Assembly: GCA_002269645.1 (NCBI GenBank)
Contig: NIVC01000259.1
Span: 1-41,743 of the forward strand
Length of the DNA stretch: 41,743 bases
Direction of reading: 5' to 3'
Origin: Macrostomum lignano
Lineage: Eukaryota
Shown: piece by piece, positions 1,881 to 36,673 of the stretch
How the letters are laid out: every line of letters begins with the position of its first letter
How positions within the stretch are numbered: position 1 is the stretch's first letter
Notes under the pieces: generated by a model
The model's database searches: none
What the model saw: the letters and a program-made list of their open reading frames with translations, nothing else
Told to the model about the DNA's origin: nothing
Made by a program: the position numbers and the translations under genes

Positions 1881-4800
1881 ATGACTGACTTTGGTAAGTC
1901 ACAGTTATTTTTGTGATAAAGAAGAGCATGACTATTTTGTTACTTTTCCTTTTTATCATTGATGTTATTGTCTTCGTGTCTATTGAATTATAATTTTAAC
2001 ATCAAAATTGTCTTAGTTGATCAGTCCATATTGGAATGCCATGGGGGAAGTTAGTACTACTAAGTAGTATTTTTTATTTCTGATTAAGTAATTACAAAGC
2101 TAAGTACACTGTGTACAGATTGGTCAATTGTTTCTCTGGATCTGAAGCTTTTTGATCATTCAAATATGAACTAGGAAAACAAGACTAATAATGTTGAACT
2201 AATTTTGTTTATTTTTTGTTTAGGCTACCTTACTATAAGTTATATTTATAAGTTTTTAGGATATCATTATATTATACCATATTTTATTTTTTTAGGTATA
2301 CTATAGCTACTGGGTATAGTAACTAAACAATATAGATTAATATACCTAATTTAGTTAAAGCAAAAAGCTTTTAACTTTTTAGATATAATCAAAAAGATAT
2401 ATCAATACATAATCAAATGATATATAGTTTGTTTCAAATGAGCCTTTTTATATTGTGTTCATATTTAAAATTTTCTTGTTTTGAATGTTTTTAAAAAAAA
2501 CATTTTTATATTATTATGCTAGAACTATTACTATTCAATTCTGAGTGCTAAATATAATGTCTACTAACATTTTTATATATGACTATATGCTTGACCTTAG
2601 CCTTACTTAGGATGATAATAAGACTAGCTATTATCAACTATATTGATATGTATTTCTATATTTTATATAGATTAACAAATTTAAAGCAATGGTTCAAGTA
2701 TATAATTTTTTTGCTAATATAGCCTATATAGTCTATAGGCTATAAACATATTAGTATAAATATGTACATAGCTTTCTAATATAATAATAAGGCCAATATC
2801 AATGAATGATTAGCAACAATAATATAATTCATTAAGATTCAGTACCCTATTTCCTATATCATATAGTTATTAGGATTTTACCATAGATAAGCTATATATA
2901 GCATGCATTTGCAACACTTAGCCAATCTAGATGATCTAGCTAAGTGGCAAGGTAGCCAAGGCAAGGATATTGCAAAACTGATTAACCAAGCACCAAAATT
3001 ATAAGGAAAAAATAGAACAGAATATCAAAAATGAAATTAAAAAAACTAGATAAAACATTGAAAGAATAAAAAAAAATAATAAAAACTTACATAAGCAATA
3101 AAAAAGCAAAAAATACAAAAGAGAATTGGAGTTATAGTTAGTTAAAGACAAATATTTAAATTGCATAAAAGGCAAAGCTATATCACAAAGTGGCTCTCCA
3201 GATACAACTATGTCACATTTTGTGAAAATCTATATCTCAACTAGGCATGTAAAATTTAGAAGGTTGCGCATGTATAATATATAACCTTTAATTAGTATAG
3301 TATCTTTACCTCAAACTTAATGCTGTCTGGCATTCTGAAACTTGTAAAAAATCTCAGGTTGTGTCAAAAGATGCTTTAAAACTAAATAAGTTTAATGTTA
3401 TCTATACCTTCCCAGTGGCAGACAGTCAGGGTTTAGTTAGAGTTTATTATGTATAAGCATAAACTTCGTTTTATCAAAAACCTATGCCCTATGGCATCCC
3501 CTTCAATTCCCATTATTGATATGCATACCCATGTCTTTGTAAGCTACCTAGAAGGCCCCTAATAGAGCAAATATTGAGCTTCTGTAGAGCAGTTGAAAAA
3601 TAATTGCAACAATTGGCAAAACGTACATAACTGCCATCTTTGGCCTGTTTTCGCTTCGTTTGGGGCTTCTATGACTTGTAAAATTAAGTCCTCCCTACCA
3701 CTGGTTTCACTTGGCGCACGCAGACCAGGACAGGACGCCAAGACGGGAAGACAAAAAAGAGAAGAAAAAGCGCGAAAAAGAGAAACGAGACCACGGCTAC
3801 CACCAATTCGAGGACGACTCAGCCAGCATCGACGCTGTGGTGCTGCAGCCGCACTCGTCATATGGCGATTCGGCAGCTTCCGGCTCCGCAGCTGCCGCCG
3901 CACCGGCGGGCTCCTCAGCGGCTTCGTCTGGCCAGCAGGCCAATCCTGCCGGCACTCTGTCGCCCAAAGCCAAGAAGACCAAGAGCTTCAAGCTGCCAAC
4001 AAAGAAGAGCATATTGAAGAAAGGTTCGACGGATAAAGATGATAAAAAGCAGAAGAAGCTTCGGCGCAAGAATCTCAAAGACGAGGTGGAACAGCTGACC
4101 CCCAATCGGCCGGTCTTTGGGGTGCCTCTCGCGCTGGCCGTTCAGCGTTCGAAGAGTCACGACGGAGTGGCGCTGCCGGCCTGCTTTAGGTGGGCACCTG
4201 AGATCCTTCATCAGAAATGCTCAGATTGGGCAGCTGAGACCCTTCATCATAGATGCCACTGGAGCCGCTTCTAACATCCCAGACCCTCAGGCTGAAGACC
4301 CTGGAACCCTTCCAGCATCCCAGATCCCCAAACTAAGCCGAGGCTCTGACTTTCCCAACCGTAATTTCCTGCCCAAAACTCGCTCCCACAGGGAATGCAT
4401 CGACTTCGTTGAAGCCAACGCCCTCTCCTGCGAAGGCATCTACCGAGTGTCCGGCGTCAAATCCAAGGTGCAGGCCATCATCCGGGCCTACAATCTGCAC
4501 CTCTCTGTTGAACTATCCGACTACGATCCATTCGTAGTAGCCAGCGTCGTCAAGAACTTCATCCGGGAGCTGCCGGAATGCGTGCTCACCGAAAAATTGC
4601 TGCCGGAGTTTGAAGGGTCCTGGAGCATCCGGGATCCGAAGCAGAAGGTTGAAACATTCCAACGGTTGCTATCCTCTCTGCCGGCGCCCAACTATATGCT
4701 GCTGGCCTACACCCTGCTGCACATGTCGCACGTGGTGGCGCATCAGGCCCAGAATAAGATGAGCTTGCAGAACGTGAGCATAGTGCTCAGTCCCACTATG

Positions 4801-7800
4801 CAAATATCGCACAAGGTGTTGCACGTGTTCTTCTCTCACCTAGATGAATTGTTCTCCGGTGTTGTTATTAAACGCTACGTGGCACCGCTGAGACCGCAGG
4901 CGCGTATGGAGATTCCGGAGACGCTTGAGGATGTGGAGGCTGAGCTGGCTAAACAGGTGATTATAATTTGGCTGCTAAATGGAAGTGAGTAGTCGGCCAG
5001 TGGCTTATCTGAATTACTGGAATAAAATCGTACCAAATCTGAATGACTGACAGACTGGAAGTAGGTAGTGGTCTATCTGAATGACCGGAAGTGGGTAGTA
5101 GCCCACCTAACTCACCGGAAGTGGGTGGTAGTGGCCTATCTGAATGACCGGAAGTGGGTAGTGGCCTATCTGAATGACCGGAAGTGGGTAGTGGCCTATC
5201 TGAATAACCGGAAGTAGGTAGTGGCCTATCTGAATGACCGGAAGTAGGTAGTGGCCTATCTGAATGGCCGCAAGAGGGTAGTGGCCTATCTGACTGACCG
5301 GAAATGGGTAGTGGCCTATCTGACTCACCGGAAGTAGGTAGTGGCCTATCTGACTGACCGGAAGTGGGCTGTATTTGCTCCCCTGAAGGCCGTAAAGTAG
5401 GATTCAGATCCTTAGACATTATAGAGCTATCTAATTGAATAAGCCGCTAAACGTGCCAGGAGTCCCTGCTAGAATGGCTGCACCAAGAGCTGAGCGCCCT
5501 GAAGTCGGACGGCCTGGACTCGCAGGACAAATCCAACTTGATCTGGGAGGTACAACGGGTTGTCACGGCGCTTAAACGGAAGAAGAGTCTGATTGAAATG
5601 GACGACATCGAGGGTGAGTAGTTTCACATAGCGCTGTATCTAGGGGAAGTGCCTTCCATAGCACTGATAAAATCCCCTCCCTGAAGCTTATCTATTGTTA
5701 AAATGGCCCCTTTCCGAAGCTTATCTATTGTTAAAATGGCCCCTTTCTGAAGCTTATCTATTGTTAAAATGGCCCCTTTCTGAAGCTTATCTTTTGTTAA
5801 AATGGCCCCTTTCTGAAGCTTATCTTTTGTTAAAATGGCCCCTTTCTGAAGCTTATCTTTTGTTAAAATGGCCCCTTTCTGAAGCTTATCTATTGTTAAA
5901 ATGGCCCCTTTCTAAAGCTTATCTATTGTTAAAATGGCCCCTTTCTGAAGCTTATCTATTGTTAAAATGGCCCCAATCTATTTTTTAAATTGTCTCTCCT
6001 TCGCGAAACTTGTTAAAATCAAGCCGTATGAAGGTAAAGCCGTGAGGCTGCAACACAGAACTGAGCACTCCAGGTAGTTTAAACCAATCGCCCGCAGCCA
6101 TCGAAAGCGAGCTGCTCAAGCAGGAGACATCGCTAAACCGGCTACACGCCACCCTGACCGGCTGTCCAACCGACGATCAGGAGACGCAGGACCAGCTGTG
6201 GGAGGTGCAGCGCACCATCACTATGCTCAAACGGAAGCTGAGAAAAACTGCCGGCGCGCCCAGGCCCAGCCTGCCAGGCGGCCCGGCCTCGGGAGCGACA
6301 GCCAGCGTCGCAGGCGCCGGCAGCATCCGCGGCAGCGCGTCGGCCGATCACGTGAACAGCGCCGCCGGCGGCATCGCCAAATCGCCGTCGTTCCCAACTC
6401 CTGGCAGCGGCATCCGACCGGACATGACCGCTCTGGAGGAGAATCTCGAACTCAATCTGGCTCTGCGGCGGGTTAATGTACAGGTGATGCCAACTTTGGA
6501 AACATATAACAGAGCAGAGTAAAGCTTGGCAGCTGTCCAAAAATTGTCCAAGCACACAGAAACCCATGCTGGGAATCTGGATATTGCTAAACGTTAACAG
6601 CGTCACCTTGATGAAGGTCCAGAACAGGGGTCGGCAAACTTTTTACCTCCGAGCCCAGTTAGAAAACCCAGCGCATGACTACTGCGGGTCAGAGGGGGAG
6701 AGAGGAGAGGGAATAGAAAGTGAGATGAGAGATAGGAGAAAGAAGAGGCGAGGCGAGGCGAAGAGAGGAGAAGATAGGAGAGGATGGAGGAGAGGAGAGG
6801 AGAGGCGAGAGAGGAGAGAAAGGAAGAAAAGAGAGGAGATAAGAGAGAAGAGGAGAGCATAGCAGAGAAGGAGAGGAGAGGGAAGGGAAGGAATGGAGAG
6901 AGGAGATAAAAAAGAGAAGAGAGAGTAGATTAGAGAGAAGAGTGCCAGATTGCTATTTTGAAGTTTCAAAGGACCCGAGGGCCGGATAGAGAAGCTTCGC
7001 GCTTGTGGGCCGGCGTTTGCCGACCCCTGGTCTAGAAGCTTCCCCTAGGTGATGGGCAGTGTTGCACACGCAGTGATAAAATATGACGACTTAAGCAAGG
7101 TCGCATTGTTGAATTTCTCAATCATTCGCGCTTGAAGGTGCACCAGCCAAGTGGCACCGCGGAGACGCCGCAGCTCCCTCAAGCGCCGGAGCAAGTTCAG
7201 CAAACCCAGCCGTCATCAGTACAGCAGCCGCTGCCTCAGCCGCAATCTCAGCAGCCGCAGACTCTGCCTCAGCCTCAACCTCAGCAGCAGCCTCCGCCGC
7301 AGCCTTCGCCGCCGGAGCCGCCACAGGAGCCGCCGCAACCGTACGAAGCTCCGCCGCCAGAGCCGGGGCCGCTCAACCGGCTGGACAGCCTGCGCGAGAG
7401 CAGCCGCTGCGGCGACTCGTCCATCGCCGACACGGACACAGACGTGGAGCTGTACGCGCTGACCAGGAACCCGCCGCCTTTGGAGCTTCAGGAAGACGAG
7501 CCGGACGAATCCGGGACGGAGGAGGGCGACGGCGAGTACGAAGAAGACGAAGCCGAGGAAGAGGAGGAGGAAGCTGACGATGACGATGGTCAAGCGCGTC
7601 AGGTGAATCCCTGGCTTCTTGGAAACCCACATGCTGCTCGCGCACACTGTCACTTACGTGATATGGATGCCAGGGTGTCTATAGGAATGCCAGGGTGTCT
7701 CTATAGGAATTCCAGGGTGTCTCAGTCTAGGGATGCCAGGTTGTCTATAGGAATGCCAGGGTGTCTCTAGGGATGCCAGGGTGTCTATAGGAATGCCAGG

Positions 7801-8928
7801 GTGTCTCTAGGGATGCCAGGGTGTCTATAGGAATGCCAGGGTGTCTATAGGAATGCCAGGGTGTCTATAGGAATGCCAGGGTGTCTATAGGAATGCCAGG
7901 GTGTCTCAGTCTAGGGATGCCAGGGTGTCTATAGGAATGCCAGGGTGTCTCTAGGGATGCCAGGGTGTCTATAGGAATGCCAGGGTGTCTATAGGAATGC
8001 CAGGGTGTCTATAGGAATGCCAGGGTGTCTCTAGGGATGCCAGGGTGTCTATAGGAATGCCAGCGTGTCTATAGGGATGCCAGGGTGTCTATAAGAATGC
8101 CAGGGTGTCTATAGGAATGCCAGGGTGTCTATAGAAATGCCAGAGTGTCTCTATAGGAATTCCAAGGTGTCTCTATAGGAATGCCAAGGTGTCTCTAGGA
8201 ATTCCAGGGTGTCTATATAGGGATGTCAGGGTGTCTCTAAAGTAATGGCAGGGTGTCTATAGGGATGAATTTCAAGGGTCTGTGTGTACCGGGGTCTCCA
8301 AGTAAGTTTAATAAGCACACTAAACGAGTAACAGGGTTTTTTTACTTCCGAGGGTCTCTACATGTAGATGAGTTTCGAGAAGCCTAGATGAGTTTAAAGT
8401 CACTAGAAAAGCTTCATAAATGATTTTTTTAATAAACTACTGCAGGACCTGGACCAGCTGGCCTACAGGCTGGAGGAAGAGGAGAACCAGCTGCTGTGCG
8501 CCTCTGAGGTAGAAGAGGAGACGGCGGACCTCCTAGCCGTGGTGGAGGACCTCCGCCGCCTCCGCCTAGAGGAGGAGGAGCTGGCGCAGCTGTCCGACGA
8601 ACTCGGCATGCGGGTGGCCCGCGAGCGCCAGGAGATGGACCGGCTGCGCGCCGAGATCGATCGATGGGCCAACCGGGACCAGCGGCCGGCCGGCGGCCCG
8701 GACAACTGTCCGGACACTTCGTCAAGCGCGTCCAGCGATTCAGAAGACGAATCCGACTCAGCGCTGCTGGAGCAGTGGCATTTCTTCCGCGAGGACAATC
8801 ACCGGCTGGTGAAGGAGAACGCGGACCTGGCTGAGCGGCTGCAGAAAGAGCGAATGCTGTGCGCCGAGTACCGGGTGCAGCTGCGAGTGCAGGCCGCCTA
8901 CGGACCGCTAATCTCCATCGGGCTTTGA
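1881..8928 (+). CDS. RALBP1: RalA-binding protein 1 / RLIP76 (RhoGAP, Ral-binding coiled coil, C-terminal coiled coil), about 843 aa
   Basis: join(1881..1893,3724..4189,4392..4956,5460..5613,6098..6483,7138..7602,8446..8928) = 2532 nt. All introns are GT-AG with consistent phases 1,2,0,1,0,0. RhoGAP region: PVFGVPL...LPACFRECIDFVE...CEGIYRVSGVKSKV (Arg finger present)...NVSIVLSPTMQIS. Ral-binding motif WEVQR..T.LKRK. C-terminal RQEMDRLRAEI and EYRVQLR. The 13-nt first coding exon (ATGACTGACTTTG|gtaagt) is the least certain part. Confidence 0.93.
5001..5368. repeat. 30-bp minisatellite in a RALBP1 intron, about 11 units
   Basis: Unit GTAGTGGCCTATCTGAATGACCGGAAGTGG with minor variants and degenerate edges. 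Confidence 0.95.
5683..5985. repeat. 33-bp minisatellite in a RALBP1 intron, about 9 units
   Basis: Unit GAAGCTTATCTATTGTTAAAATGGCCCCTTTCT. Confidence 0.95.
6625..7029. mobile_element. Non-autonomous hAT-type MITE with an internal GA-rich tract
   Basis: Perfect 15-bp TIRs: CAGGGGTCGGCAAAC (6625-6639) and GTTTGCCGACCCCTG (7015-7029). 8-bp target-site duplication GTCCAGAA / GTCTAGAA (7/8 match, nnnTAnnn type as in Charlie/Buster). Confidence 0.88.
7663..8270. repeat. About 20-bp minisatellite in the last RALBP1 intron
   Basis: Unit GGAATGCCAGGGTGTCTATA, with variant GGGATGCCAGGGTGTCTCTA; roughly 30 units. Confidence 0.95.
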
Positions 8929-10153: not shown

Positions 10154-11205
10154 CTATATCAGCGAGACGCCGCCACCAGCGCTTCGACCGCCGCGTACGC
10201 CGCCGCCGCTGCTTTGCGTCGGCAGGCGCTCCAGCTGGGCCCGAGTGCTATGCAGTTGCATTTCCAGCTGGGCCAGCTGAGATGACACGGCAGCAGCGGC
10301 GGCAGACGGCCGGCCGCGCACGGAGCTCAGCTGGCTAAGCAGCTCCATGATTGGATCGCCGGCCAACGGCCAGGCCAGCCGTTCGATGAACCCGCTGGCT
10401 CCTCCGCCTCCGCCTTCGCCACCGCCTCCGCCCCCGCCAGCTGCGGCAGCCAAAACAGCGGATGCCGAGCCCAGACCGCGCCCTCGACCAGCGCCAGACC
10501 TGACTGGCACGCAGGACACCCGGCTTAGGCTGGGCAAGCCGCGTCTAGACGCGTCTCGGTTGCTGCGCAGGCCGGCGGTAGACAAAAGCGACGAGTCGTC
10601 CGGGCCGAGGGCGCCCTAAAAATGCGATGAGCGCCAACACACAGATGGTCCATTGAGAATGGATGGGTATAGAATAAGGTCAACTGAGGACAAAAGAGAG
10701 AACAATGGCTCACGCGCACGTGATCAAGCTGCAGGTGATGTGCCAGATTCCTGGTCTGATGATTCGGTGCCCCGCTCGGACACGCGGCGCACACTGGACA
10801 GATGACCTGCTGATGTTGCTGGTGTCCAGACGACGCATCGGCGTGCTCCCCGGCCACGTGTTCGGCCAGGTCTGACTGCGAGTAGCCAAGGTTGCCGCAG
10901 TAAGGACAGGTGAAAGCGACTGCCCCAGTATCGGCAGCTGAGCCGGACTCGCCGCCAAAGTACAGCAGCATATCGGCGCGAGTCAGAATGCACTGCATCG
11001 GGTGCTCGGCCCTGTGCTGAATCGCTCCTCCAGCGGCCATGATGTCCGCCTCCATCGGGGCGAATTGTTCCTCGGCGCAGAAATTTCTCGAATCATAGCA
11101 GGGGCCGCACAGATCGAAATCGAAACAGCGGAGGCATTTGTAGCGCCGGCCGCGGAAGGCTTGCTGGTCGCAGCCGTCGCAGCTGACGCCGTCGTGTCGG
11201 GACAT
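10154..11205 (-). CDS. KCMF1: E3 ubiquitin ligase KCMF1 (ZZ zinc finger plus Di19-type zinc-binding region), about 317 aa
   Basis: complement(join(10154..10615,10714..11205)), phase 0 intron (cgc|gtgagc...tttag|ggc). MSRHDGVSCDGC...FRGRRYKCLRCFDFDLCGPCY...HPMQCILTR...FTCPYCG...VICPVCAA and DPIMELLSQLSSVR match the remembered KCMF1 sequence. Confidence 0.93.
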
Positions 11206-11291: not shown

Positions 11292-12020
11292 TTGCTACCC
11301 TATCTACCCTTAGATGACCATTGCTACCCCTGATCTACCTTAGTAGACAAGTGCTACCCCTATCTACCATTAGTGCACCAGTGCTACCCCTATCTACCAT
11401 TAGTGCACCAGAGCTAGCCCCTATCTACCATTAGTGCACCAGAGCTAGCCCCTATCTACCCATAGTGCACCAGAGCTAGCCCCTATCTACCCATAGTGCA
11501 CCAGAGCTAGCCCCTATCTACCCATAGTGCACCAGAGCTAGCCCCTATCTACCCATAGTGCACCAGAGCTAGCCCCTATCTACCCATAGTGCACCAGAGC
11601 TAGCCCCTATCTACCCATAGTGCACCAGAGCTAGCCCCTATCTACCCATAGTGCACCAGAGCTAGCCCCTATCTACCCATAGTGCACCAGAGCTAGCCCC
11701 TATCTACCCATAGTGCACCAGAGCTAGCCCCTATCTACCCATAGTGCACCAGAGCTAGCCCCTATCTACCCATAGTGCACCAGAGCTAGCCCCTATCTAC
11801 CCATAGTGCACCAGAGCTAGCCCCTATCTACCCATAGTGCACCAGAGCTAGCCCCTATCTACCCATAGTGCACCAGAGCTAGCCCCTATCTACCCATAGT
11901 GCACCAGAGCTAGCCCCTATCTACCCATAGTGCACCAGAGCTAGCCCCTATCTACCCATAGTGCACCAGAGCTAGCCCCTATCTACCCATAGTGCACCAG
12001 AGCTAGCCCCTATCTACCCT
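11292..12020. repeat. 31-bp minisatellite upstream of the KCMF1 ATG, about 23 units
   Basis: Unit GTGCACCAGAGCTAGCCCCTATCTACCCATA, almost invariant in the core. Confidence 0.97.
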
Positions 12021-12970: not shown

Positions 12971-15900
12971 TCAGTCGTCGCCCAGCCTAGGCCGCTTGCT
13001 GTCCGGCGGCTGCGACTGCTCACAGCAGTAGCGGCTAATCGATTCCGGCACCTGCAGCAGCTGCGGCCTAGTAGTTAAATTCTCTAGAAAATTCACGTAC
13101 TCATTGCGACCCTCAGCCTGGCTGTTCACATACAGCCGCATCCGAAGCGAGGGTAGCTGGCCGCCTGGCAAATTCGCGTCATCGTCGTCAAAAGAAGAAT
13201 CGTCTGGCCCAGCAGCGGCCGTGTCAGACTTTGGCACGGTGGAGGCGGCGTTAGCAACAGCGGTGGTGGTGGCTGCCTCGCTCGACTCTCCGTTATCCTC
13301 TTTAGCATCATCGTTGTCGCGTTGAAGCTCCTCGGATAGTAGCTGTTCGAATAAGCTGCTGCTGGCGCCGCTGCTGCTGCTGGCGCAGGCGCCACCGCCG
13401 CTACTCTGGCGCGAGGGCAGCACGGATGGCGCCGACTGTCTGCTAGTGGCTACGGCGGCCATTGTGCGCTGCACCTGTCATAAATCCATTATTGATGACT
13501 TGCTATTTTTAATATTTCCAATCTATTTTGGCTAGGATTCCTTGCTCTCACCTCTGGCCGGCCCGGGTTCGACTCCCGGTCAGGGAACCAGTGCGAGGTG
13601 AGCTTCTACATGTCATTACGCTACAAGCGATTCGCTTACACATTCTTTGCTTGCTACTCTTCAGTAGGCAATCTCAAATAATTAGTTTTGATCTCTATAG
13701 TCTAGTTTAAGGATCTGGCAACTTACTAGTTGCCTAATTTGAGTATCATACGGGTACTGTCTAACAATAGGTGTCGTTTATCAACAGCCAACGCACCTGC
13801 TTGCGCTGCAATTCCTCCTGAGCAGAACTGAGCATCTGAACGCTGTAATCCTGCAGCACCTTGGGCATGGTGTTAGGATTTAGCGGGCAAATCTTTTTGT
13901 GCTCCTTTAATTGGTGCAATGGTCCGACATTGTTGCAGCCGAGGGCGCGCCAAGGACAAGCCACAATATAGTCGTCTATAATATTTTGCACAAGAAAGTC
14001 GTGGTGCAGTTGGCCCACTGTTACTGGCTTGCGATCGCTCGGACAGATGGCATTCTTCTGTAGCCAATCGAATATGCAGCGCTTGCAGAAGCTGTGGCCA
14101 CATGGGGCGCGCCATGGCTCTTTGAATACCTCTTGACAGATGCAGCAGTACAAATGGGGACTGACAGCATCAGGATTTAAGAAGTACCTGTGAGAATTTT
14201 AAAGGTTTGACATACTAATATTCAATGTTGTAATAAAGATGGAACACGAGTTTTCAAAGCTAGGATCTTATCCTAATCCTACCTATCTTTAGCTCTATGT
14301 CTATCACTCAGGTGCTTCAGTGGACAGCCTGTCTCTGCCCCCCAGGTGTTTCAGCGGACAGTCCATCTGTCATCTGGTATTTAACACTATGATCAGTTTT
14401 GCCCAAAAAAATTTTTACAAATATATTTTGTACATAAATTTTGTACTTAATGACTTCCACGTCCAATGTGTCATTCCTTAGCTTTTTTCTCTATTACTTT
14501 TATATAAAAACAATTCTAATAATAAAGCAAAATATAGCTAAGACCTTCATAATATATATACTTTTTTGACTAAGGAGGCCTAAACCCAATAATAAATTTA
14601 ATATTTTATCAAATTTCAAATAAATTTAAATATAAAAGTTGGAACAGATTAGTGATGGACAAAATGTGGATTTTTGCAAGTTTCTGAAACCAAATCCAAA
14701 TGTACAAAAAATTCTGAATCCAAATCTAAATATCCAAATGTGCTTCTGAAAGTAAGCAAAAAGTAGAAGGTAAATGACAAGAATAACTATGACACTTTAA
14801 TTCTAATTACTAATGCTAATGTTGCATTTGTGCAATTTGAGTACTTTACTGTAAGTCTATACATTTGTATTTAGAAAAAAAACCAACAAATGATTATATT
14901 GAAGCAATGATTGCCAAAAATGTTTTTGAGACTTTAGGTTCAAAACCTCAAAGGTCCTAAAGTTTAGTAACTTTATTTGATATAACTTTATTAAAATATG
15001 TTACTGCAAAAAAACAATTATGACATAAAATGTTACATTTTTATTTTTTTAATACACTTTATTATTTCAAAATTTTTTATTTACATTGGATTTTTTTGGA
15101 TTTCTTGTTTTTTCATATTCATAAACATATTTGGAAATATTCAGAAAATAAAATTGTCAAATACAAAACATTCCTATTTCTAAAAAAACTAAGACATTTT
15201 TTGGATTAGATTCTAAATTTGAATACTTGGATCTATAATTAGAACAGAGTTAAGAATTGAAAAATAAATTACTAAATTGGCTAAACCTACACTAATGGAA
15301 TTTTCAAATGACTTTTTGGTATTCTTTCATTTTATGATAACATGGCACTGTCTCTATGGGAGTTGGGATTTTTTATACGATCTCCCATAGAAGACAAAAA
15401 AGTTAAGTTAAAGCCATGAAAACTGAGAACCAATTTTAGACACCCCCTCATTTTTGTCTTACGATCCCCCCACAGTGGCGCAACCAAGGGGGGGCCGGGG
15501 GGCGGTCGCCCCCCCTTAGGCGGGGGACCGAAAAAAAATCAAAGGGGGGACCAAGCGAATTTTTGCCAAAAACAGAGCCACCCCTCCGCCGCCCCCCCCT
15601 CCCGGGACTTTACCCTCAGAATCCGCCCCCCCCCTTGAAAAATTTCTGGTTGCGCTACTGTACCCCCAGTTAAATGGACATATGTTTTATATTTTAGGAT
15701 GATTTTAAGATGAAAGTGAATTCAATTTTGTCTTGCAATCACTTACATATAATTTTACTATTTAAATGATTGTATGGCATAAGTGAATATAAGCTACATG
15801 CTTATATAACTATGCTGCGCCTATATTTCAATGACTTGCAATGACAATTTATATGAAACTGGACCCGCTTAGGGATTAAAACAAAGGAATGCCTACTTTT

Positions 15901-16680
15901 TATATTAGAACTTATTCTTTTTACTGGATTTTATTAATTCAAAAGCCTTTTATTAAAAAGAAAAAATATTATATTGTTTATTATTATTCCAATGAAGAGT
16001 AGGCCTAGATCATACACCAGTATATGCTTACAAAAGTTTTTATAGAAGTATTTTTTAGTATATAGCCATAGGTCTAATTGTCTTGCAAAATTTTTCATTT
16101 GTAAAAAAATGTATGGCAAGTTACTAGACTAGATAATTGAAGTCAAATCCATATACTAAAAATGAGCTGTTTGTACCTATGTATGTTTGCTTTCCTATGT
16201 ACTAAGAATGAGTTGTTTCTAGCCTCTAGGCCCTAATTATAGGCCTAAACATTACAAAATTATATATTCAATATCTTGATTAGACTTAAGTGAACTGGAG
16301 TAATCCGGAGTTAAAGTGTTTTGCTCAAGGACACAAATTGTTCTAGTAGGATTGGGAAACAACAAACTCCCAACCTTCAAGTCAAGAGTCCAACACTCTA
16401 ACCATAAGGCTGCAACCCAGCATGTAATGGTAACAAAGGCCTAAGGCCCCTAGGTCCTGACTCCCCAGTCAATAAGTAAGTATGCTTCTAGGCATATAGG
16501 TGGTACTGGTAGATAGACCTACTTAACAGCTTCAGTATAAAACAGAACTGTAACATAGGCTCTAAAAGTTAAAGTTCTAAAACGAAATACTTACGTTTCT
16601 TCTTCTATTTCGGGTTCTGCTGGAACTTCAGGTGCTTTGCCTTTAGCATTCTTGGCACTCTGTCTTCGCCGACCTACCAT
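12971..16680 (-). CDS. TRAF/RNF151-like RING-HC E3 ligase (RING plus TRAF-type Zn finger, no MATH domain), about 326 aa
   Basis: complement(join(12971..13474,13797..14187,16595..16680)) = 981 nt, phases 2 and 0 consistent. MVGRRRQSAKNAKGK...YCCICQEVFKEPWRAPCGHSFCKRCIFDWLQKNAICPSD (C3HC3D RING), then CPWRALGC...HKKICP. The frame stays open to an acceptor near 16689, so an extra 5' exon is possible. Confidence 0.85.
13530..13590 (+). pseudogene. 5'-truncated tRNA-Glu(CTC)-derived fragment ending in CCA
   Basis: GGCTAGGATTC...CTCTCAC...GGCCCGGGTTCGACTCCCGGTCAGGGAA-CCA matches the 3' two-thirds of metazoan tRNA-Glu. Anticodon CTC at 13547-13549. The T-arm is intact, the anticodon stem is mismatched and the 5' acceptor strand is missing. 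Confidence 0.8.
14309..14378. repeat. Two-unit satellite seed, same family as the 19165-19690 array
   Basis: CAGGTGCTTCAGTGGACAGCCTGTCTCTGCCCCCCAGGTGTTTCAGCGGACAGTCCATC. Confidence 0.8.
15473..15660. mobile_element. GC-rich hAT-like MITE in intron 1 of the RING gene
   Basis: 14-bp TIRs CAGTGGCGCAACCA / TGGTTGCGCTACTG (1 mismatch). 8-bp flanks TCCCCCCA / TACCCCCA (7/8 match). Confidence 0.8.
16290..16412 (-). mobile_element. Degenerate tRNA/CORE-SINE copy
   Basis: TGAACTG...AAGTGTTTTGCTCAAGGACACAAATTGTT...CCAACCTTCAAGTC..GAGT....ACTCTAAC aligns with the SINE at 31092-31512. Confidence 0.7.
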
Positions 16681-17870: not shown

Positions 17871-19164
17871 ACATTATGATAGTGGAAACATTAAAACAAA
17901 AATTCCTATGTTATTTTGGAAATTGGAATTGTTAATACTGATTTTTGGCGCCTCAGGCACTCATTTTGTCGCGCCGAAGTAAAACTCTTAATTCCATAAC
18001 GGGTCACAAGGTGGGGCGGGCGCAGGTGGGGGAGGCAAAACATTGGCGCATGTCGCTCCACAGGTTTTACTGGGAGGGACATGTCCCTGGATCCCTGTTC
18101 CCCTCCGGTGGCGACGCGCCCTGGTCTTTATACATGTAGCTTGCGATACTCCTCAGTGTGTCTCCAAGAAAAGAAAAGTAATAACAGAAAAGCAGAAAAG
18201 TACGCTCGTAGAGAGGCACCAGTAAGAGACGTTTAAGCATGTTGGGCAGCTATGGTATCAGATACGTGAAGGTTGAGCAATTCCAATTGGATATATATCC
18301 AAGTTGACATCACTTTTATACAACCCACAAGGAGCATTCCAGAATTTCTCGAGGGAAGGCTTTAAAAGTTTTAAGAAAATAATTAAATATAGTATTAAAC
18401 ACATAGCCTTTATTTGCTGGTATGGTCAGGCATGCAGATGTTGGACCAATAACTACAAAGTGGCTACTTACTTTTTGGCTATAGCTACATGTGTACATGT
18501 ATGATCCTAATTTTCATATTACAACTACACCTGCGGAGAGAGTTCTTTTCCCTCGTTCTAAACGTGAGCCTCTGCACTTGCATGCCCCTACCTGGCTTGC
18601 ATTTTGTACATGTGTACACATGTAACTGTGTTGAAGTCAGCCTGTTTAGACAATGCCAATTTCTTTACAGAAAGAATTGGCACAATATCGATTTTCTATA
18701 CTCCAGATGCATACTGTCAAAGCTTAGCGTACGAGCGTACATGTAATTAATTTAAATGACTCAGAAGCGAATAATTGCCTTGCAAGAACCTGTAGAGATG
18801 ACCTATGACCCTAAAGTAGCTGAATAGCTGATTGAGCAAAAATGAACGGAAAAAAGACAAGTAGCGACTCTCATCAATGTTAAGAATAGAGTCGAGGCTC
18901 TTATCAAAAATAATACTGCATACTTGCGCGAATTTACTTGGACCCAAATAGCAGCAGACAGCTGCGGCGAGTCCACAGTTCACAAGATTGCTTACAGTGC
19001 GGATGCTTGCCTATAGCACAGATAATGATAGTAGCATTTTAATGATAACACCTTGAACTGTCAGGGTTGCAAGCGGCAAATTAATGTCTGCATGGGCCTG
19101 GAGCAAAAAAGCTATTTCTAATTTTTTATCGGAAGAAAGCCCTAAGCCATAATTCGTACGCCAA

Positions 19165-19690
19165 GTGCTTCAGTGGACAGCCTGTCTCTATCTCCACGTG
19201 CTTCAGTGGACAGTCCATCTCTATCCCCATGTGCTTCAGTGGGCAGCCAGTCTCTATTCCCAGGTGCTTCAGTGGGCAGCCAGTCTCTATCCTGAGGTGC
19301 TTCAGTACGTGGGCAGCCAGTCTCTATCCCCAGGTGCTTCAGTGGACAGCCAGTCTATCCCCACGTGCTTCAGTGGACAGTCCATGTCTATCCCCAGGTG
19401 CTTCAGTGGACAGCCAGTCTCTATCCTGAGGTGCTTCAGTGGGCAGCCAGTCTCTATCCCCAGGTGCTTCAGTGGACAGCCTGTCTCTATCCTGAGGTGC
19501 TTCAGTGGACAGCCTGTCTCTATCCCCAGGTGCTTCAGTGGACAGCCTGTCTCTATCCTGAGGTGCTTCAGTGGACAGCCTGTCTCTATCCCCAGGTGCT
19601 TCAGTGGACAGCCTGTCTCTATCCCCAGGTGCTTCAGTGGACAGCCTGTCTCTATCCCCAGGTGCTTCAGTGGACAGCCTGTCTATTCCT
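19165..19690. repeat. 33-bp minisatellite, about 16 units
   Basis: Unit GTGCTTCAGTGGACAGCCTGTCTCTATCCCCAG, more variable at its 5' end. Confidence 0.95.
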
Positions 19691-21300: not shown

Positions 21301-22842
21301 ATGTTGCACCAGTCTGTTGCCGAGCCGACGGAGAGCGAGGCGCGCCGCATAATTGTCCGATTCCAGACGGAGGGCGCCGGCGTGCCGGACATTGTCCGCG
21401 AGGTCTGCGAGGATCGCAACTGGGTGGAGTTCGACCCGAGCGAGCACGGGCCCAACGACTGGAATCTCTGGTGGAAGATCGGCCGCTTCCGCGCCTCGGA
21501 CTTCGAGAAGCTGCAGAGCTGGCAGCGGCTGAATCATCACCAGATGGGGAGCACCTCGCTGATCACCACGAAGGATGGCCTCCATCGAGAGATGAAAATT
21601 CTGCAGGGCACCTTCGGCAAAGCGACCATAGACTTTGTGCCCAGCACGTACCTGATGCCCCGGGAAGAGCGACAATTTCAGCAGAAGTTCGCGGAGAATC
21701 GCGAGAAGAAAGCCGCCAACTATTGGATATTTAAGCCGGCTGACCTCAGCCGCGGCCGAGGCATCTTCGTGTTTAACGACATCGGCGAGCTGCGATACAG
21801 CGAAAAGTCAGTCGTACAGGAGTACATTGCCAACCCGTACCTCATCGGCGGGTACAAGTTCGACCTCCGACTCTACGCAGTCGTGGTCTCATTCAAGCCT
21901 TTGATAGTCTACATCTGCAGAGAGGGTCTGGTCCGCTTCGGTACAGAGAAGTACGACCTAAAGAACCTGTGTAACGTGTACAGCCACATCACCAACACCA
22001 GTATCAATGTCAGCGGACCGTCCTACGATTCCGCCAAGATGGGCATCGGCGAGGGCTGCAAATGGAGTCTCAGCAATCTAAGAAACTATCTGTACAGTCA
22101 AGGTGTTAATGACCGTCTGATATTTGCGCGCGTCACGGCTATCATTGTGCTCGCACTGATGGCCCAGGCGAAATCGGCCACCGTATCCACTGGCAACTGC
22201 TACGAGCTGTACGGCTTTGACATCTTGCTGGATGCGGCGCTGAAACCCTGGCTGTTGGAAGTAAACTTCAGTCCGGCTCTAAATATCGACTGTTCAGCGG
22301 ACGCTCAGGTGAAGCGCGAGATGCTTAACGGCGTGTTCGACCTGCTGTGCTTCACTGAATCCGACAAACTGCAGAGCCGTGGCGGCCGGCAGGCGGCCGG
22401 CAAGGAGAAGCGGCTCAGCCTGCAAAGCGTGGACAGCGGCATCGCCAGCGGCAACAGCTCGGCAAAGTCACTGCGCAGACAGCGGTCGGGCGGAAACCTG
22501 TCTCGGGGCGTCACCCGCACGGACAGCCTGCGGGCCAGCGAGTCCCGCTGCAGTCTTCTCGAGTCCATTGAGGAATTGACGCAGGCCCCATCGGAGTCAT
22601 CGCAGGCCTCGATTCCGGGTCTCAGCCGTAACGCGTCCTCCTACGGCGGCTTTGAGGAATTTCTACGGAGTCGGCAGAAATCAGCGCGCCAAAAGCAGCT
22701 GTCGGAGCAGCAGCTGCACCAACAAATGCAGCACCTGTCCCGGTCGATTCCGAACTTGCCATCGATTCTAACCCCAGCGTCGCCAGATGAGGGTGAAAGT
22801 TCCAGCAGCGTGGCGCCGGATTCCACTGTCGACGAGACGGAA

Positions 22843-22888
<46 letters not shown>

Positions 22889-23640
22889 TCGTTAGGCGAA
22901 AGAGTCTCGGCCAGCCGGTCCGCATCAACAGAGCCGCCCTGCTGCGTAGCCAGCAGAACCAGCAGCGTCTCAGTTCGCTCACTCCGTCGCTACCGCCGGG
23001 GGCGGCATCGAAGCCGCCTCTGGCTTCATTTAAGCGGCCGCCTCTGGCCAAGGAGTCCCGGCTGCGCCTCCTGGCTGAGCGGGATCCACACGCGCTGCGC
23101 GAGCCGGCCGACACGGAGTCGGAGACGGCCGAATCGGAGGCAGATTCGGATTCGGTCAAGGCGACCAGGAGGGTGGGGGCTCAGCGCGGCTTTGGTGGCA
23201 GCGGACCCCGCCGAGTCCCTCAGAGTGCAAGGCGCTTGCGCAGCAGCGGCCGGATCGGCAGCAGCGGCAACAAGCATCGGCAAAAGCAGCAAGAGCAGGA
23301 GCAGGACGTGCAGGAGGCTTTGGACACTGGCGAGCAGGAGCGACTTCGTCAAGAAGCTGAGTGGAAGGCGCGGAGCAGTCCCTACGGAGACCTGCCGATC
23401 ACGCGGCACTGGAAGCGACCGCCGAAGCAGTTCGGCGCCTTCCGCTTGGCTTTCCCGTTCAACCGAGCCACCGAGAGCGCCTGTCGGGACGTCAAGGCGT
23501 CCGAACGGTTCGTTGTGAAGGAAGTGCAGCGGCTGCTCAAGCACAGACAGCGCGAGTTGGACGAGGGCCGCATCATCGAGTCGGCGGCAGTGTGCGACGC
23601 TGAGGAGATCTGGCCGCCAGTGCGCGGGTCTTTCGTCTGA
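21301..23640 (+). CDS. TTLL2: Tubulin tyrosine ligase-like 2 (tubulin glutamylase family), 779 aa in one coding exon
   Basis: DWNLWW, WQRLNHH, YWIFKPADLSRGRGIFVF, VQEYIANPYLIGGYKFDLRLY, EGLVRFGTEKYDL, HITNTSIN, IGEGCKWSL and ELYGFDILLDAALKPWLLEVNFSPAL.IDC are TTL ATP-grasp motifs. The GCKW and LxxDC features are closest to TTLL2. Confidence 0.9.
22846..22887 (+). repeat. Pure (CAG)14 encoding polyQ in the TTLL2 tail
   Basis: 42 nt of uninterrupted CAG. Confidence 0.97.
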
Positions 23641-25610: not shown

Positions 25611-26145
25611 AACAGATAATGCTAATTGCTAATGCCATAGACTAACTGATAATGCTAATTGCTAATGTCATAGACTAACTGATAATGCTAATTGCTAATG
25701 CCATAGACTAACTGATAATGCTAATTGCTAATGTCATAGACTAACTGATAATGCTAATTGCTAATGTCATAGACTAACTGATAATGCTAATTGCTAATGC
25801 CATAGACTAACTGATAATGCTAATTGCTAATGTCATAGACTAACTGATAATGCTAATTGCTAATGTCATAGACTAACTGATAATGCTAATTGCTAATGCC
25901 ATAGACTAACTGATAATGCTAATTGCTAATGCCATAGACTAACTGATAATGCTAATTGCTAATGCCATAGACTAACTGATAATGCTAATTGCTAATGCCA
26001 TAGACTAACTGATAATGCTAATTGCTAATGCCATAGACTAACTGATAATGCTAATTGCTAATGCCATAGACTAACTGATAATGCTAATTGCTAATGCCAT
26101 AGACTAACTGATAATGCTAATTGCTAATGCCATAGACTAACTGAT
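25611..26145. repeat. 33-bp minisatellite, about 16 units
   Basis: Unit ACTAACTGATAATGCTAATTGCTAATG(C/T)CATAG. Confidence 0.97.
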
Positions 26146-27737: not shown

Positions 27738-28320
27738 TCTGCAACAGTAGCTAACTCTGCAACAGTAGCTAACTCTGCAACAGTAGCTAACTCTGCAACA
27801 GTAGCTAACTCTGCAACAGTAGCTAACTCTGCAACAGTAGCTAACTCTGCAACAGTAGCTAACTCTGCAACAGTAGCTAACTCTGCAACAGTAGCTAACT
27901 CTGCAACAGTAGCTAACTCTGCAACAGTAGCTAACTCTGCAACAGTAGCTAACTCTGCAACAGTAGCTTACTCTACAACAGTAGCTAACTCTGCAACAGT
28001 AGCTAACTCTGCAACAGTAGCTAACTCTGCAACAGTAGCTAACTCTGCAACAGTAGCTAACTCTGCAACAGTAGCTAACTCTGCAACAGTAGCTTACTCT
28101 ACAACAGTAGCTAACTCTGCAACAGTAGCTAACTCTGCAACAGTAGCTAACTCTGCAACAGTAGCTAACTCTGCAACAGTAGCTAACTCTGCAACAGTAG
28201 CTAACTCTGCAACAGTAGCTTACTCTACAACAGTAGCTAACTCTGCAACAGTAGTAGCTACAAACTCAATAGCTAACTCTCATCTCTGCAACAGTAGCTT
28301 ACTCTTAACCTTGCAACAGT
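27738..28320. repeat. 18-bp minisatellite, about 30 units, with a 126-bp higher-order period
   Basis: Unit CTCTGCAACAGTAGCTAA. Linked variants recur at 27969/27975, 28095/28101 and 28221/28227. Confidence 0.97.
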
Positions 28321-36364: not shown

Positions 36365-36673
36365 ATCAGCTTTTCCTATAGTACTTTGTGTACTTGTAGG
36401 ATCTGGGGCAATCAGCGGTACCCATAGTAGTCCATGTACTTGTAGGAGCTGGGGAATCAGCGGTACCCATAGTAGTCATGTACTTGTAGGAGCTGGGGAA
36501 TCAGCGGTACCCATAGTAGTCCATGTACTTGTAGGAGCTGGGGAATCAGCGTACCCATAGTAGTCCATGTACTTGTAGGAGCTGGGAAAATCAGCGGTAC
36601 CCATAGTAGTCCATGTACTTGTATGGAGCTTGGGATCAGCGGTACCATAGTAGTCCATGTACTTGTAGGAGCT
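36365..36673. repeat. 45-bp minisatellite overlapping the CCDC181 stop codon, 6 units plus 1 degenerate
   Basis: The minus-strand unit AGCTCCTACAAGTACATGGACTACTATGGGTACCGCTGATTCCCC encodes SSYKYMDYYGYR*. Confidence 0.95.

What the first reader, a model, noticed from the sequence alone, without database searches (positions are those of the whole stretch)
4913..6245. RALBP1 carries two tandem Ral-binding domains
Seen in sequence: after the RhoGAP domain the spliced protein reads ETLEDVEAELAKQESLLEWLHQEL...SNLIWEVQRVVTALKRKK, then immediately MDDIEAIESELLKQETSLNRLHATL...DQLWEVQRTITMLKRKLR. Established: human RLIP76 has one such two-helix Ral-binding domain (EEIRRQEFLLNCLHRDL...RLWEVQRILTALKRKL), with the His and Trp/Gln/Thr/Lys positions at the Ral interface. 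All of those residues are kept in both copies although the rest has diverged, which suggests both are under selection. Inference: a bivalent Ral effector able to bind two Ral-GTP molecules or two Ral paralogues. The repeats lie largely on separate exons.
Basis: partly seen in the sequence, partly recalled or inferred. Interest (0 to 1): 0.72.

Follow-up and report, generated by a model that had tools for sequence, protein, structure and literature searches.

The report
Flatworm RalBP1 with two Ral-binding domains
The RalBP1 gene of the flatworm Macrostomum lignano really does encode two Ral-binding helical hairpins in a row instead of the usual one, and this doubling turns out to be an old, undescribed trait shared by all the flatworms sampled rather than an oddity of this gene.

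Summary
The window is Macrostomum lignano contig NIVC01000259.1. The gene at 1881-8928 (+) is the RalBP1/RLIP76 orthologue (843 aa, seven exons, matching the GenBank protein exactly). After the RhoGAP domain it encodes two consecutive Ral-binding domains (RBDs), separated by only three non-helical residues. Pfam PF20924 matches twice, and AlphaFold2 predicts four confident helices forming two hairpins.

Both copies keep all six residues equivalent to the human Ral-binding hot spots (L409, H413, W430, R434, T437, K440). The two exons cannot be alternatives, because skipping either one shifts the reading frame. The deposited gene model is also derived from RNA-seq.

A second RBD is not common in animals: 234 of 252 RBD-containing proteins have one. 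It is present in all 23 flatworm RalBP1s examined (trematodes, cestodes, monogeneans). There its two helices are split by a 33-125-residue loop, so Pfam misses it. The duplication is therefore ancient.

Schistosomes have lost the His and Trp in RBD1 but keep RBD2 intact. Cyclophyllidean tapeworms have lost the His and Arg in RBD2. This pattern points to two Ral-competent, partly redundant sites. Whether one chain binds two Ral molecules at once is untested. I found no publication describing the arrangement. I rate it a new variant of a known protein, of moderate interest.

The parts
1881..8928 (+). RalBP1/RLIP76 orthologue of Macrostomum lignano (BOX15_Mlig007423g2/g3), start codon to stop codon, seven coding exons
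   Evidence: The spliced translation is identical to P0121, 843 aa.
1881..1893 (+). Coding exon 1 (MTDF + 1 nt), donor GTAAGT
3724..4189 (+). Coding exon 2: basic, low-complexity N-terminal region and the start of the RhoGAP domain
4392..4956 (+). Coding exon 3: most of the RhoGAP domain (arginine finger R178 in GIYRVSG), the interdomain linker, and the first 11 residues of RBD1 helix 1. It ends in phase 0 after ...AELAKQ.
   Evidence: Pfam PF00620 130.8 bits, residues 156-298
4924..5597 (+). RBD1 (residues 338-394): helix 1 at 338-364 and helix 2 at 370-394, encoded by 4924-4956 + 5460-5597 and interrupted by intron 4957-5459
   Evidence: AF2 helices, pLDDT about 90-95; PF20924; coordinates
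4957..5459 (+). Intron inside RBD1 helix 1 (AKQ|ESLL, phase 0), mostly a 30-bp x10.4 minisatellite (5053-5368). The position matches the mammalian RRQ|EFLL exon boundary inferred from isoforms.
   Evidence: isoform sequences P0051, P0059, P0105
5460..5613 (+). Coding exon 4 (154 nt, not a multiple of 3): the rest of RBD1, the 3-residue break (M395-D397), and the first residues of RBD2 helix 1
5614..6097 (+). Intron between the two RBD-bearing exons (phase 1), mostly a 33-bp x9.1 minisatellite (5674-5974)
5607..6255 (+). RBD2 (residues 398-452): helix 1 at 398-421 and helix 2 at 427-452, encoded by 5607-5613 + 6098-6255. There is no intron at the position homologous to the RBD1 intron.
   Evidence: AF2; PF20924 29.4 bits alone; match to 2kwh E 1.6e-7
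6098..6483 (+). Coding exon 5 (386 nt): RBD2, a Gly/Ala/Ser-rich spacer, and the conserved acidic-leucine motif ALEENLELNLALRRV
7138..7602 (+). Coding exon 6: Pro/Gln-rich and acidic low-complexity region
8446..8928 (+). Coding exon 7: C-terminal helical/coiled-coil-type region ending in the conserved ...AEYRVQLRVQ motif, then the stop codon
   Evidence: compare human ...ELRVQLRLL and trematode ...AELKVLLRL

Best explanation
The finding is the RalBP1 (RLIP76) gene of the free-living flatworm Macrostomum lignano. It has the normal core of the family: a RhoGAP domain followed by a Ral-binding antiparallel two-helix hairpin. It also carries a second, homologous hairpin directly behind the first.

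The second hairpin (RBD2) arose by an ancient tandem duplication of the RBD. The duplication is at least as old as the common ancestor of Macrostomorpha and Neodermata (parasitic flatworms), and every flatworm RalBP1 sampled has kept it. Both hairpins are included constitutively in the mRNA.

In M. lignano each hairpin keeps the full set of residues that carry Ral binding in the human protein, and each is predicted to fold as an independent hairpin. The most likely working model is therefore that each RalBP1 chain offers two Ral-GTP docking sites next to the RhoGAP domain. This would raise avidity for membrane patches rich in Ral-GTP, or at least provide two partly redundant sites.

Shown here: gene structure, duplication, residue conservation, predicted fold, phylum-wide orthology and reciprocal degeneration of the copies.
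Inferred: that each copy binds Ral.
Speculative: that both bind at the same time.
For: Gene model and identity:
- The spliced translation is exact.
- RhoGAP scores 130.8 bits and PF20924 matches twice.
- The best structural match of the AF2 model is human RLIP76 GAP-RBD, 2mbg (E 6e-18, 267 aligned columns, 47% identity).

Fold:
- AF2 on GAP-RBD1-RBD2 gives mean pLDDT 92.1 and pTM 0.83.
- It predicts four helices (fragment residues 213-239, 245-269, 273-296, 302-327) with a 3-residue break between the hairpins.
- The RBD1-RBD2 fragment alone gives the same four helices (pLDDT 86.6).

Hot spots:
- Human L409, H413, W430, T437 and K440 (plus R434 for RalA) are the binding determinants (PMC8124665). 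All six are identical in both M. lignano copies.

Constitutive inclusion:
- Exon lengths of 154 and 386 nt make skipping either exon frame-breaking.
- The GenBank annotation derives from a genome-guided RNA-seq transcriptome (PMC5730564).
- Three copies of the locus in the assembly have the same structure.

Antiquity and selection:
- An exhaustive profile search of 1.84 billion representative proteins ranked two-RBD proteins at the top. They are RalBP1s of trematodes, cestodes and monogeneans.
- All 23 flatworm proteins examined have RBD1 plus RBD2, with a conserved linker (KRKK-x-L-x-E-[LM]-x-D-[PI]-x-A-I-[RE]-x-E-L) and an RBD2-specific T-M-L-K-R signature.
- M. lignano RBD1 and RBD2 are sisters in only 0.7% of neighbour-joining bootstraps. 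Flatworm RBD1s form a clade in 74% and RBD2s in 49%.
- In RBD2, W is kept in 23/23, L in 23/23, T in 22/23 and K in 22/23. Contact positions vary less than the rest (entropy 0.47 vs 1.05).

Each copy appears able to do the job alone:
- Schistosomatids have lost H413 and W430 in RBD1 but keep RBD2 (intact in four of the five; S. japonicum has Q at the R434 position).
- Diphyllobothriidean cestodes lost H413 in RBD1 but keep RBD2.
- Cyclophyllidean cestodes lost H413 and R434 in RBD2 and mostly keep H and W in RBD1.

Flatworms have Ral: a 'Ras-related protein Ral-A' appears in the Fasciola proteome.
Against: - No binding data exist for any flatworm RBD.
- The hairpins are joined by only three residues (M395-D397), so two roughly 20-kDa Ral molecules may clash. 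The tools gave no coordinates or PAE, and no multimer prediction was possible.
- Many flatworm lineages have lost hot-spot residues in one copy. Two intact sites are therefore not universally needed, which fits redundancy better than obligate bivalency.
- The position equivalent to human Q417, which contacts switch 2, is S in RBD1 and T in RBD2. L429 is I in RBD1.
- Support for a single RBD2 clade is only 49% on 48 sites.
- No triclad, polyclad or catenulid sequence was recovered, so 'all flatworms' means Macrostomorpha plus Neodermata only.
- RalBP1 may already dimerise through its C-terminal coiled coil, so extra valency may add little.
Confidence: 0.6

Rival explanations
1. Only one of the two hairpins is a working Ral binder in M. 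lignano. The other is a retained duplicate that serves as a spacer, stabilises the first, or has been recruited to bind a different partner, such as another small GTPase or a coiled-coil protein.
For: One copy has degenerated at hot-spot positions in most neodermatan lineages, so one site is evidently enough. RBD2 has its own conserved signature (T-M-L-K-R, L-D-R-L-H) and, in Neodermata, a 33-125-residue loop insert, which could reflect a diverged role. The 3-residue linker may not allow double occupancy.
Against: In M. lignano and in six opisthorchiid, plagiorchiid and echinostome trematode proteins, both copies keep the hot spots; the only change there is K440R in RBD1, and the review's tighter-binding human triple mutant also carries K440R. 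Which copy degenerates differs between lineages, which is the pattern expected if both started as Ral binders. In RBD2 the Ral-contact positions are the best-conserved positions.
Confidence: 0.3
2. The two hairpins pack against each other into a closed four-helix bundle. This buries the Ral-binding faces, giving an autoinhibited module that opens on some signal.
For: The linker is very short, and pTM is fairly high (0.83 with the GAP domain, 0.66 for the pair), which suggests a defined mutual arrangement.
Against: Foldseek found no significant PDB match for the RBD1-RBD2 model: best E 0.3, TM 0.38, rmsd above 10 A, and no E below 0.001. A compact four-helix bundle would normally find many matches. 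Surface-exposed contact residues (H, W, R, T, K) are conserved as in the human open hairpin. No coordinates or PAE were available, so this is only weakly tested.
Confidence: 0.08
3. The tandem RBD is an artefact of assembly or annotation, or the two exons are alternatives that are never joined in one mRNA.
For: The Mlig_3_7 assembly is highly redundant and repeat-rich. The introns around these exons are minisatellites. One copy of the locus carries single-base deletions in exons.
Against: Three loci have identical exon-intron structure. Exon lengths make either exon obligatory for an open frame. The annotation is transcript-derived. Orthologous double RBDs occur in more than 20 independently sequenced species. 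The copies are only 63% identical at the nucleotide level, so this is not a collapsed or expanded repeat.
Confidence: 0.02

Closest known systems
Human RLIP76/RalBP1 RhoGAP-RBD dyad (PDB 2MBG; RBD alone 2KWH; RBD-RalB complex 2KWI)
   Same: The order is the same: RhoGAP, linker, then a two-helix Ral-binding hairpin. Identity over GAP+RBD is 47%, and 2MBG is the best Foldseek match. All Ral-binding hot-spot residues are identical in both flatworm copies. The phase-0 intron inside helix 1 is shared with RBD1, inferred from mammalian isoforms. The C-terminal ...RVQLR... motif is conserved.
   Different: Human RalBP1 has one RBD, as do 234 of the 252 RBD-containing proteins examined, from sponges, cnidarians, molluscs, arthropods, tunicates and vertebrates. 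The flatworm protein has a second RBD three residues after the first.
RalBP1 of parasitic flatworms (e.g. Schistosoma mansoni Smp_176070, Clonorchis sinensis, Echinococcus granulosus, Schistocephalus solidus, Cichlidogyrus casuarinus)
   Same: They have orthologous RBD1 and RBD2, the same conserved inter-RBD linker, and the same downstream acidic-leucine motif.
   Different: In Neodermata the two helices of RBD2 are separated by a 33-125-residue low-complexity loop, against 12 residues in M. lignano. Pfam therefore reports 0-1 RBD. Their RhoGAP domains carry large inserts. One of the two RBDs has usually lost hot-spot residues, whereas M. lignano keeps both intact and compact.
Unidentified lophotrochozoan RalBP1 fragment (P0122; Logan SRR32924702 contig, locus L004)
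   Same: It has two complete, canonical RBDs in tandem, and Pfam reports two stretches (56.5 bits).
   Different: Both RBDs lie in one exon, and each is followed by a donor-like AAG|GT[CA]AGT site. RBD2 may therefore be optional. Its RBD2 is closest to its own RBD1 (33/50) rather than to flatworm RBD2, which suggests an independent, younger duplication. The organism is unknown; flanking exons are about 70-75% identical to mollusc and other spiralian sequences.
Tandem HR1 (antiparallel coiled-coil 'ACC finger') repeats of the Rho effectors PKN/PRK1 (from my own knowledge, not tested here)
   Same: The design principle is the same: several small antiparallel two-helix GTPase-binding hairpins are strung head to tail in one effector, and individual repeats differ in which GTPase they bind, or whether they bind one at all.
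   Different: It is an unrelated family that binds Rho/Rac rather than Ral. No sequence relationship was detected or claimed.

Membership tests
RalBP1 / RLIP76 | RhoGAP domain with a catalytic arginine finger | tested here: met
   PF00620 scores 130.8 bits over residues 156-298. R178 lies in the GIYRVSG motif. The AF2 model superposes on RhoGAP structures with TM 0.8-0.88 normalised to the target.
RalBP1 / RLIP76 | RLIP76-type Ral-binding domain (two-helix hairpin, Pfam PF20924) directly C-terminal to the RhoGAP domain | tested here: met
   PF20924 scores 39.3 bits with two stretches. phmmer matches 2kwh, 2kwi and 2mbg. The AF2 hairpins have pLDDT of about 88-96.
RalBP1 / RLIP76 | Conservation of the Ral-contact hot spots (human L409, H413, W430, R434, T437, K440) | tested here: met
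   All six are identical in RBD1 (L352, H356, W377, R381, T384, K387) and in RBD2 (L412, H416, W434, R438, T441, K444).
RalBP1 / RLIP76 | GTP-dependent binding to Ral GTPases | not testable with these tools
   This needs recombinant protein and Ral-GMPPNP. No multimer prediction was available.
RalBP1 / RLIP76 | C-terminal helical/coiled-coil region (the POB1/REPS-binding region in vertebrates) | tested here: inconclusive
   The last exon encodes a charged, heptad-like region ending in AEYRVQLRVQ. This aligns by eye with human ELRVQLRLL and trematode AELKVLLRL. I ran no coiled-coil predictor or partner test.
Flatworm tandem-RBD RalBP1 (group defined here) | A second RBD following RBD1 after a short conserved linker (KRKK-x-L-x-E-[LM]-x-D-[PI]-x-A-I-[RE]-x-E-L), with T-M-L-K-R in helix 2 | tested here: met
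   M. lignano reads KRKKSLIEMDDIEAIESEL ... TITMLKRKL. This aligns column for column with 22 neodermatan proteins.
Flatworm tandem-RBD RalBP1 (group defined here) | Long low-complexity loop between the two RBD2 helices | tested here: not met
   The loop is 12 residues in M. lignano against 33-125 in Neodermata. The insert is therefore a neodermatan addition, not part of the ancestral duplication.

The most novel reading that the evidence does not exclude
Flatworm RalBP1 is a true bivalent Ral-GTP reader. One chain engages two membrane-anchored Ral-GTP molecules at once, or four in a coiled-coil dimer. Recruitment of its RhoGAP and endocytic functions would then respond steeply to local Ral-GTP density. 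The reciprocal decay of RBD1 in schistosomes and RBD2 in cyclophyllidean tapeworms would record independent reversions to a monovalent effector. No natural multivalent Ral effector of this kind has been described.
Probability: 0.25. Interest if true: 0.6.

Novelty: new variant of a known kind. Interest (0 to 1): 0.45.

Why it matters
RalBP1/RLIP76 is the textbook effector that links Ral to Rho-family signalling, endocytosis and mitochondrial fission. Its domain plan (one RhoGAP, one RBD) is described as conserved across metazoans (PMC8124665).

A whole phylum carrying a second RBD offers a natural experiment on effector valency. M. lignano has two intact sites in a compact form and can be made transgenic. 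Schistosomes rely on what looks like the 'new' copy, and cyclophyllidean tapeworms on the 'old' one.

The result also corrects database annotation. Pfam detects no more than one RBD in the parasite proteins because RBD2 is split by a long loop, and in S. mansoni the one it detects is RBD2.

The practical impact is modest. It is a domain-architecture variant, not a new mechanism, until stoichiometry is measured.

Tried and rejected
1. Alternative or mutually exclusive exons. Rejected on exon phase and the transcript-based annotation.

2. Recent, lineage-specific duplication in Macrostomum. Rejected: the copies are 52% identical in amino acids and 63% in nucleotides. They are sisters in 0.7% of bootstraps, and orthologues of RBD2 exist across Neodermata.

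3. 'Common in invertebrates'. Rejected outside flatworms. 102 of 121 first-round homologues have exactly one WEVQR motif and none has two apart from M. lignano. Of 252 proteins with an RBD hit, 234 have one domain.

4. P0124 (107 aa, ENA) showed two stretches. This is a perfect 21-residue repeat (EQLWEVQRVVTQLKRKVCI twice), which looks like an assembly artefact or very recent microduplication, so I did not count it.

5. The second homologue search, with the M. lignano + P0122 double-RBD profile, found no further full double RBD. It oddly did not list the M. lignano protein itself, so I treated its sensitivity as limited.

6. Identifying the organism behind P0122. The SRA accession appears in no paper. 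BLAST of its exons gives 70-75% identity to mollusc and other unnamed spiralian sequences. Unresolved.

7. Foldseek of the RBD1-RBD2 model, used to decide between a packed bundle and two free hairpins. There was no significant hit, which is only weak evidence against a compact bundle.

8. Literature searches for 'two/tandem/second Ral-binding domain', for RalBP1 + Platyhelminthes, and for RalBP1 + Schistosoma found nothing relevant.

9. Rfam scan of the whole window: no hits.

I found only an annotation of Ral-A in Fasciola.
Full report
**What the window is**

The protein encoded at the finding is 100% identical to GenBank entries from Macrostomum lignano. The window has the same length (41,743 bp) as contig NIVC01000259.1 of assembly GCA_002269645.1, and its exon coordinates match that contig exactly. 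The gene is BOX15_Mlig007423g2/g3, annotated only as 'hypothetical protein / Rho-GAP domain-containing protein'.

**Gene model**

I rebuilt the coding sequence from the raw DNA. The exons are 1881-1893, 3724-4189, 4392-4956, 5460-5613, 6098-6483, 7138-7602 and 8446-8928, all with GT-AG introns. The 2532-nt CDS translates exactly to the 843-aa database protein P0121.

**The observation**

After the RhoGAP domain (Pfam PF00620, 130.8 bits, residues 156-298, arginine finger R178), the protein has two consecutive matches to Pfam PF20924, 'RLIP76, Ral binding domain'. Both align to the solved human RBD (2KWH/2KWI/2MBG).

The two copies are 52% identical. Their local alignment score is 114, against 25 +/- 5 for shuffled sequence. 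Nucleotide identity is only 63%, so this is not a recent repeat or an assembly duplication.

AlphaFold2 on GAP-RBD1-RBD2, using a 22-sequence alignment, gives mean pLDDT 92.1 and pTM 0.83. It predicts four helices: residues 338-364 and 370-394 (RBD1) and residues 398-421 and 427-452 (RBD2). Only three non-helical residues separate the hairpins. The best PDB match is the human RLIP76 GAP-RBD structure 2MBG. The RBD1-RBD2 fragment alone gives the same four helices.

**Ral-contact residues**

The RLIP76 review (PMC8124665) names L409 and H413 (helix 1) and W430, T437 and K440 (helix 2) as the determinants of binding to RalA and RalB. R434 contributes for RalA and L429 for RalB, and Q417 contacts switch 2.

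| Human residue | RBD1 | RBD2 |
|---|---|---|
| L409 | L352 | L412 |
| H413 | H356 | H416 |
| W430 | W377 | W434 |
| R434 | R381 | R438 |
| T437 | T384 | T441 |
| K440 | K387 | K444 |
| Q433 | Q380 | Q437 |
| L429 | I376 | L433 |
| Q417 | S | T |

**Are both copies in one mRNA?**

Exon 4 (154 nt) and exon 5 (386 nt) are not multiples of three. Joining exon 3 to exon 5 gives a stop after 12 codons. Joining exon 4 to exon 6 shifts the frame and loses the C-terminal domain. They therefore cannot be mutually exclusive or cassette exons of a functional protein.

The GenBank annotation of this assembly was produced from a genome-guided RNA-seq transcriptome, not ab initio (PMC5730564). The assembly holds three copies of the locus with identical exon-intron structure. 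One is 99.76% identical over 7 kb. Another has single-base deletions in exons 2 and 3, which explains its truncated gene model.

**Is a double RBD common?**

- Among 121 homologues from the first search (sponges, cnidarians, molluscs, annelid, ticks, insects, tunicates, vertebrates), 102 have exactly one WEVQR-type motif. Seventeen have none (truncated models or isoforms), and only the M. lignano proteins have two.
- I built an RBD profile (A1) and ran it against 1.84 billion representative proteins. It found 391 hits. Because two domains add up in score, two-RBD proteins rise to the top.
- Every multi-stretch hit was inspected. Apart from one artefact-like fragment and one unidentified contig, they are RalBP1s of parasitic flatworms: Paragonimus, Opisthorchis, Echinostoma, Calicophoron, Dicrocoelium, Schistocephalus, Cichlidogyrus and Protopolystoma.
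- A third search with a flatworm profile added Clonorchis, four Schistosoma species, Trichobilharzia, Heterobilharzia, Spirometra, Taenia, Echinococcus, Hydatigera, Hymenolepis and Mesocestoides.
- All complete models have RBD1 followed by RBD2.
- In these parasites the two helices of RBD2 are separated by a 33-125-residue low-complexity loop, against 12 residues in M. lignano. Pfam therefore reports one RBD or none. This probably explains why the architecture has gone unnoticed.
- Literature searches for two, tandem or second Ral-binding domains, and for RalBP1 in flatworms, found nothing.

**Orthology and age**

M. lignano RBD2 aligns column for column with neodermatan RBD2. The alignment includes the inter-RBD linker (M. 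lignano KRKKSLIEMDDIEAIESEL, cestode KRKKALLELTDPNAIRTEL, trematode RRRKTLCDPEVIRAEL), the T-M-L-K-R signature in helix 2, and a downstream acidic-leucine motif.

In a neighbour-joining analysis of 48 helix columns:

- flatworm RBD1s form a clade in 74% of bootstraps;
- flatworm RBD2s form a clade in 49%;
- the two M. lignano copies are sisters in 0.7%.

The duplication therefore predates the split of Macrostomorpha and Neodermata. No triclad, polyclad or catenulid sequence was recovered, so I cannot say whether it is ancestral to all Platyhelminthes.

**Origin of the copy**

The intron inside RBD1 helix 1 (AKQ|ESLL, phase 0) sits where mammalian isoforms show an exon junction (RRQ|EFLL; P0051, P0059, P0105). 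RBD1 thus carries the ancestral intron. RBD2 has no intron there (LKQETSL is continuous). Instead, an intron lies eight codons upstream. The duplicated unit included the part of helix 1 that lies upstream of the ancestral intron. A plain exon duplication is therefore not enough. Either the unit spanned the intron, which was later lost, or the template had no intron. This is inference.

**Pattern of conservation across 23 flatworm proteins**

| Position (human numbering) | RBD2 kept | RBD1 kept |
|---|---|---|
| L409 | 23/23 | 23/23 |
| W430 | 23/23 | 18/23 |
| T437 | 22/23 | 21/23 |
| K440 | 22/23 (R in the other) | K or R 23/23 |
| H413 | 15/23 | 14/23 |
| R434 | 14/23 | 8/23 |

Contact positions are less variable than the rest of the domain. 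Mean column entropy is 0.47 vs 1.05 in RBD2 and 0.76 vs 1.00 in RBD1.

The losses are lineage-specific and reciprocal:

- The five schistosomatids have C/N for His, R for Trp and H for Arg in RBD1; four keep an intact RBD2 and S. japonicum has Q at the R434 position.
- Spirometra and Schistocephalus have L for His in RBD1 but an intact RBD2.
- Cyclophyllidean cestodes have Q for both His and Arg in RBD2, and mostly keep His and Trp in RBD1.
- M. lignano keeps all six in both copies. Six trematode proteins (Clonorchis, Opisthorchis, Echinostoma, two Paragonimus, Dicrocoelium) do too, except for a conservative K440R in RBD1.

My reading is that both copies began as Ral binders, that either can carry the function alone, and that having two intact sites is maintained in some lineages but is not essential. 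The species are not independent samples, so these counts are descriptive.

**Mechanism**

- *Shown:* the gene structure, two folded-looking hairpins, intact contact residues, constitutive inclusion, and ancient, conserved duplication.
- *Inferred:* each hairpin binds Ral-GTP in the manner of 2KWI.
- *Speculative:* both are occupied at once, giving avidity for Ral-GTP-rich membrane next to the RhoGAP domain.

Three points count against simultaneous binding. The linker is only three residues. One copy has degenerated repeatedly. RalBP1 may already dimerise through its C-terminus.

The autoinhibited four-helix-bundle alternative is weakly disfavoured. The RBD1-RBD2 model finds no significant PDB analogue (best TM 0.38, E 0.3). 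I had no coordinates, PAE or multimer prediction.

Flatworms do have Ral: a Ral-A annotation appears in a Fasciola proteome. I could not count paralogues.

**A second, probably independent case**

P0122 is an ORF on a 2.4-kb genomic contig from SRA run SRR32924702 (organism unknown, with spiralian-like flanking exons). It has two canonical RBDs in one exon. Each is followed by AAG|GT[CA]AGT, so the unit seems to have been duplicated together with its splice donor, and the second RBD may be optional. Its RBD2 is closest to its own RBD1 (33/50) and not to flatworm RBD2. This suggests that RBD duplication has happened more than once.

**Verdict**

The feature is real, expressed, conserved and apparently undescribed. 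It is a phylum-level variant of a well-known effector rather than a unique or categorically new system, and its key functional claim (bivalency) remains to be measured. Interest is moderate, at 0.45.

Noticed in passing
window 5053-5368, 5674-5974, 7667-8267, 11298-12019, 19161-19684, 25610-26146, 27738-28254, 36389-36675, 41367-41743: Nearly every intron and intergenic spacer holds a different minisatellite (units of 14-44 bp, 6-29 copies, 83-98% matches). The two introns that flank the RBD exons are each mostly one such array. This agrees with the reported 15% simple/tandem-repeat content of this genome. The array lengths are identical in all three assembly copies of the locus.
   Followed up: partly
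L001 (NIVC01002052.1) at the equivalents of window 4099, 4326 and 4734: A second copy of the RalBP1 locus carries single-base deletions. Two are in coding exons (a C5>C4 run and a G), which explains its truncated 561-aa gene model (P0001). This is either a young pseudogene copy or a long-read homopolymer error. A third copy (L002) is 99.76% identical over 7 kb.
   Followed up: partly
L004 1378-1767 (Logan SRR32924702 contig): An unidentified lophotrochozoan has two canonical RBDs in one exon. Each is followed by a donor-like AAG|GTCAGT or AAG|GTAAGT, which suggests alternative 5' splice sites that would make the second RBD optional. Its RBD2 is closest to its own RBD1, so this is probably an independent duplication.
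   Followed up: partly
window about 6430-6475 (ALEENLELNLALRRV): A short acidic-leucine motif downstream of the RBDs is conserved. Trematodes have ELDEEEVLNLTLRKLP, and molluscs have a similar motif straight after their single RBD (EEELKLDLQ / EDELKLELQ). Its function is unknown to me. Its position shows that RBD2 was inserted between RBD1 and this motif.
   Followed up: no
P0344, P0346, P0353, P0350, P0257, P0175 (neodermatan RalBP1s): The RhoGAP domains of parasitic-flatworm RalBP1s are interrupted by long low-complexity inserts, so Pfam splits them into two stretches. The proteins are 1000-1350 aa, against 843 aa in M. lignano and about 650 aa in vertebrates.
   Followed up: no
window 10154-11205 (-), 12971-16680 (-), 21301-23640 (+), 29991-30551 and 33209-33703 (+), 37417-38496 (-): Neighbouring genes are a ZZ + zf-Di19 zinc-finger protein (KCMF1-like), a RING-finger protein, and an apparently intron-less 779-aa tubulin-tyrosine-ligase-family ORF. 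There are also two nearly identical tandem first exons of a DIOX_N (2OG-oxygenase-type) gene, and a CCDC34-like coiled-coil protein. Rfam found no RNA family hits in the window.
   Followed up: partly
window 6699-6942: A 240-bp purine-only (AG-rich) low-complexity tract lies inside the intron between exons 5 and 6.
   Followed up: no
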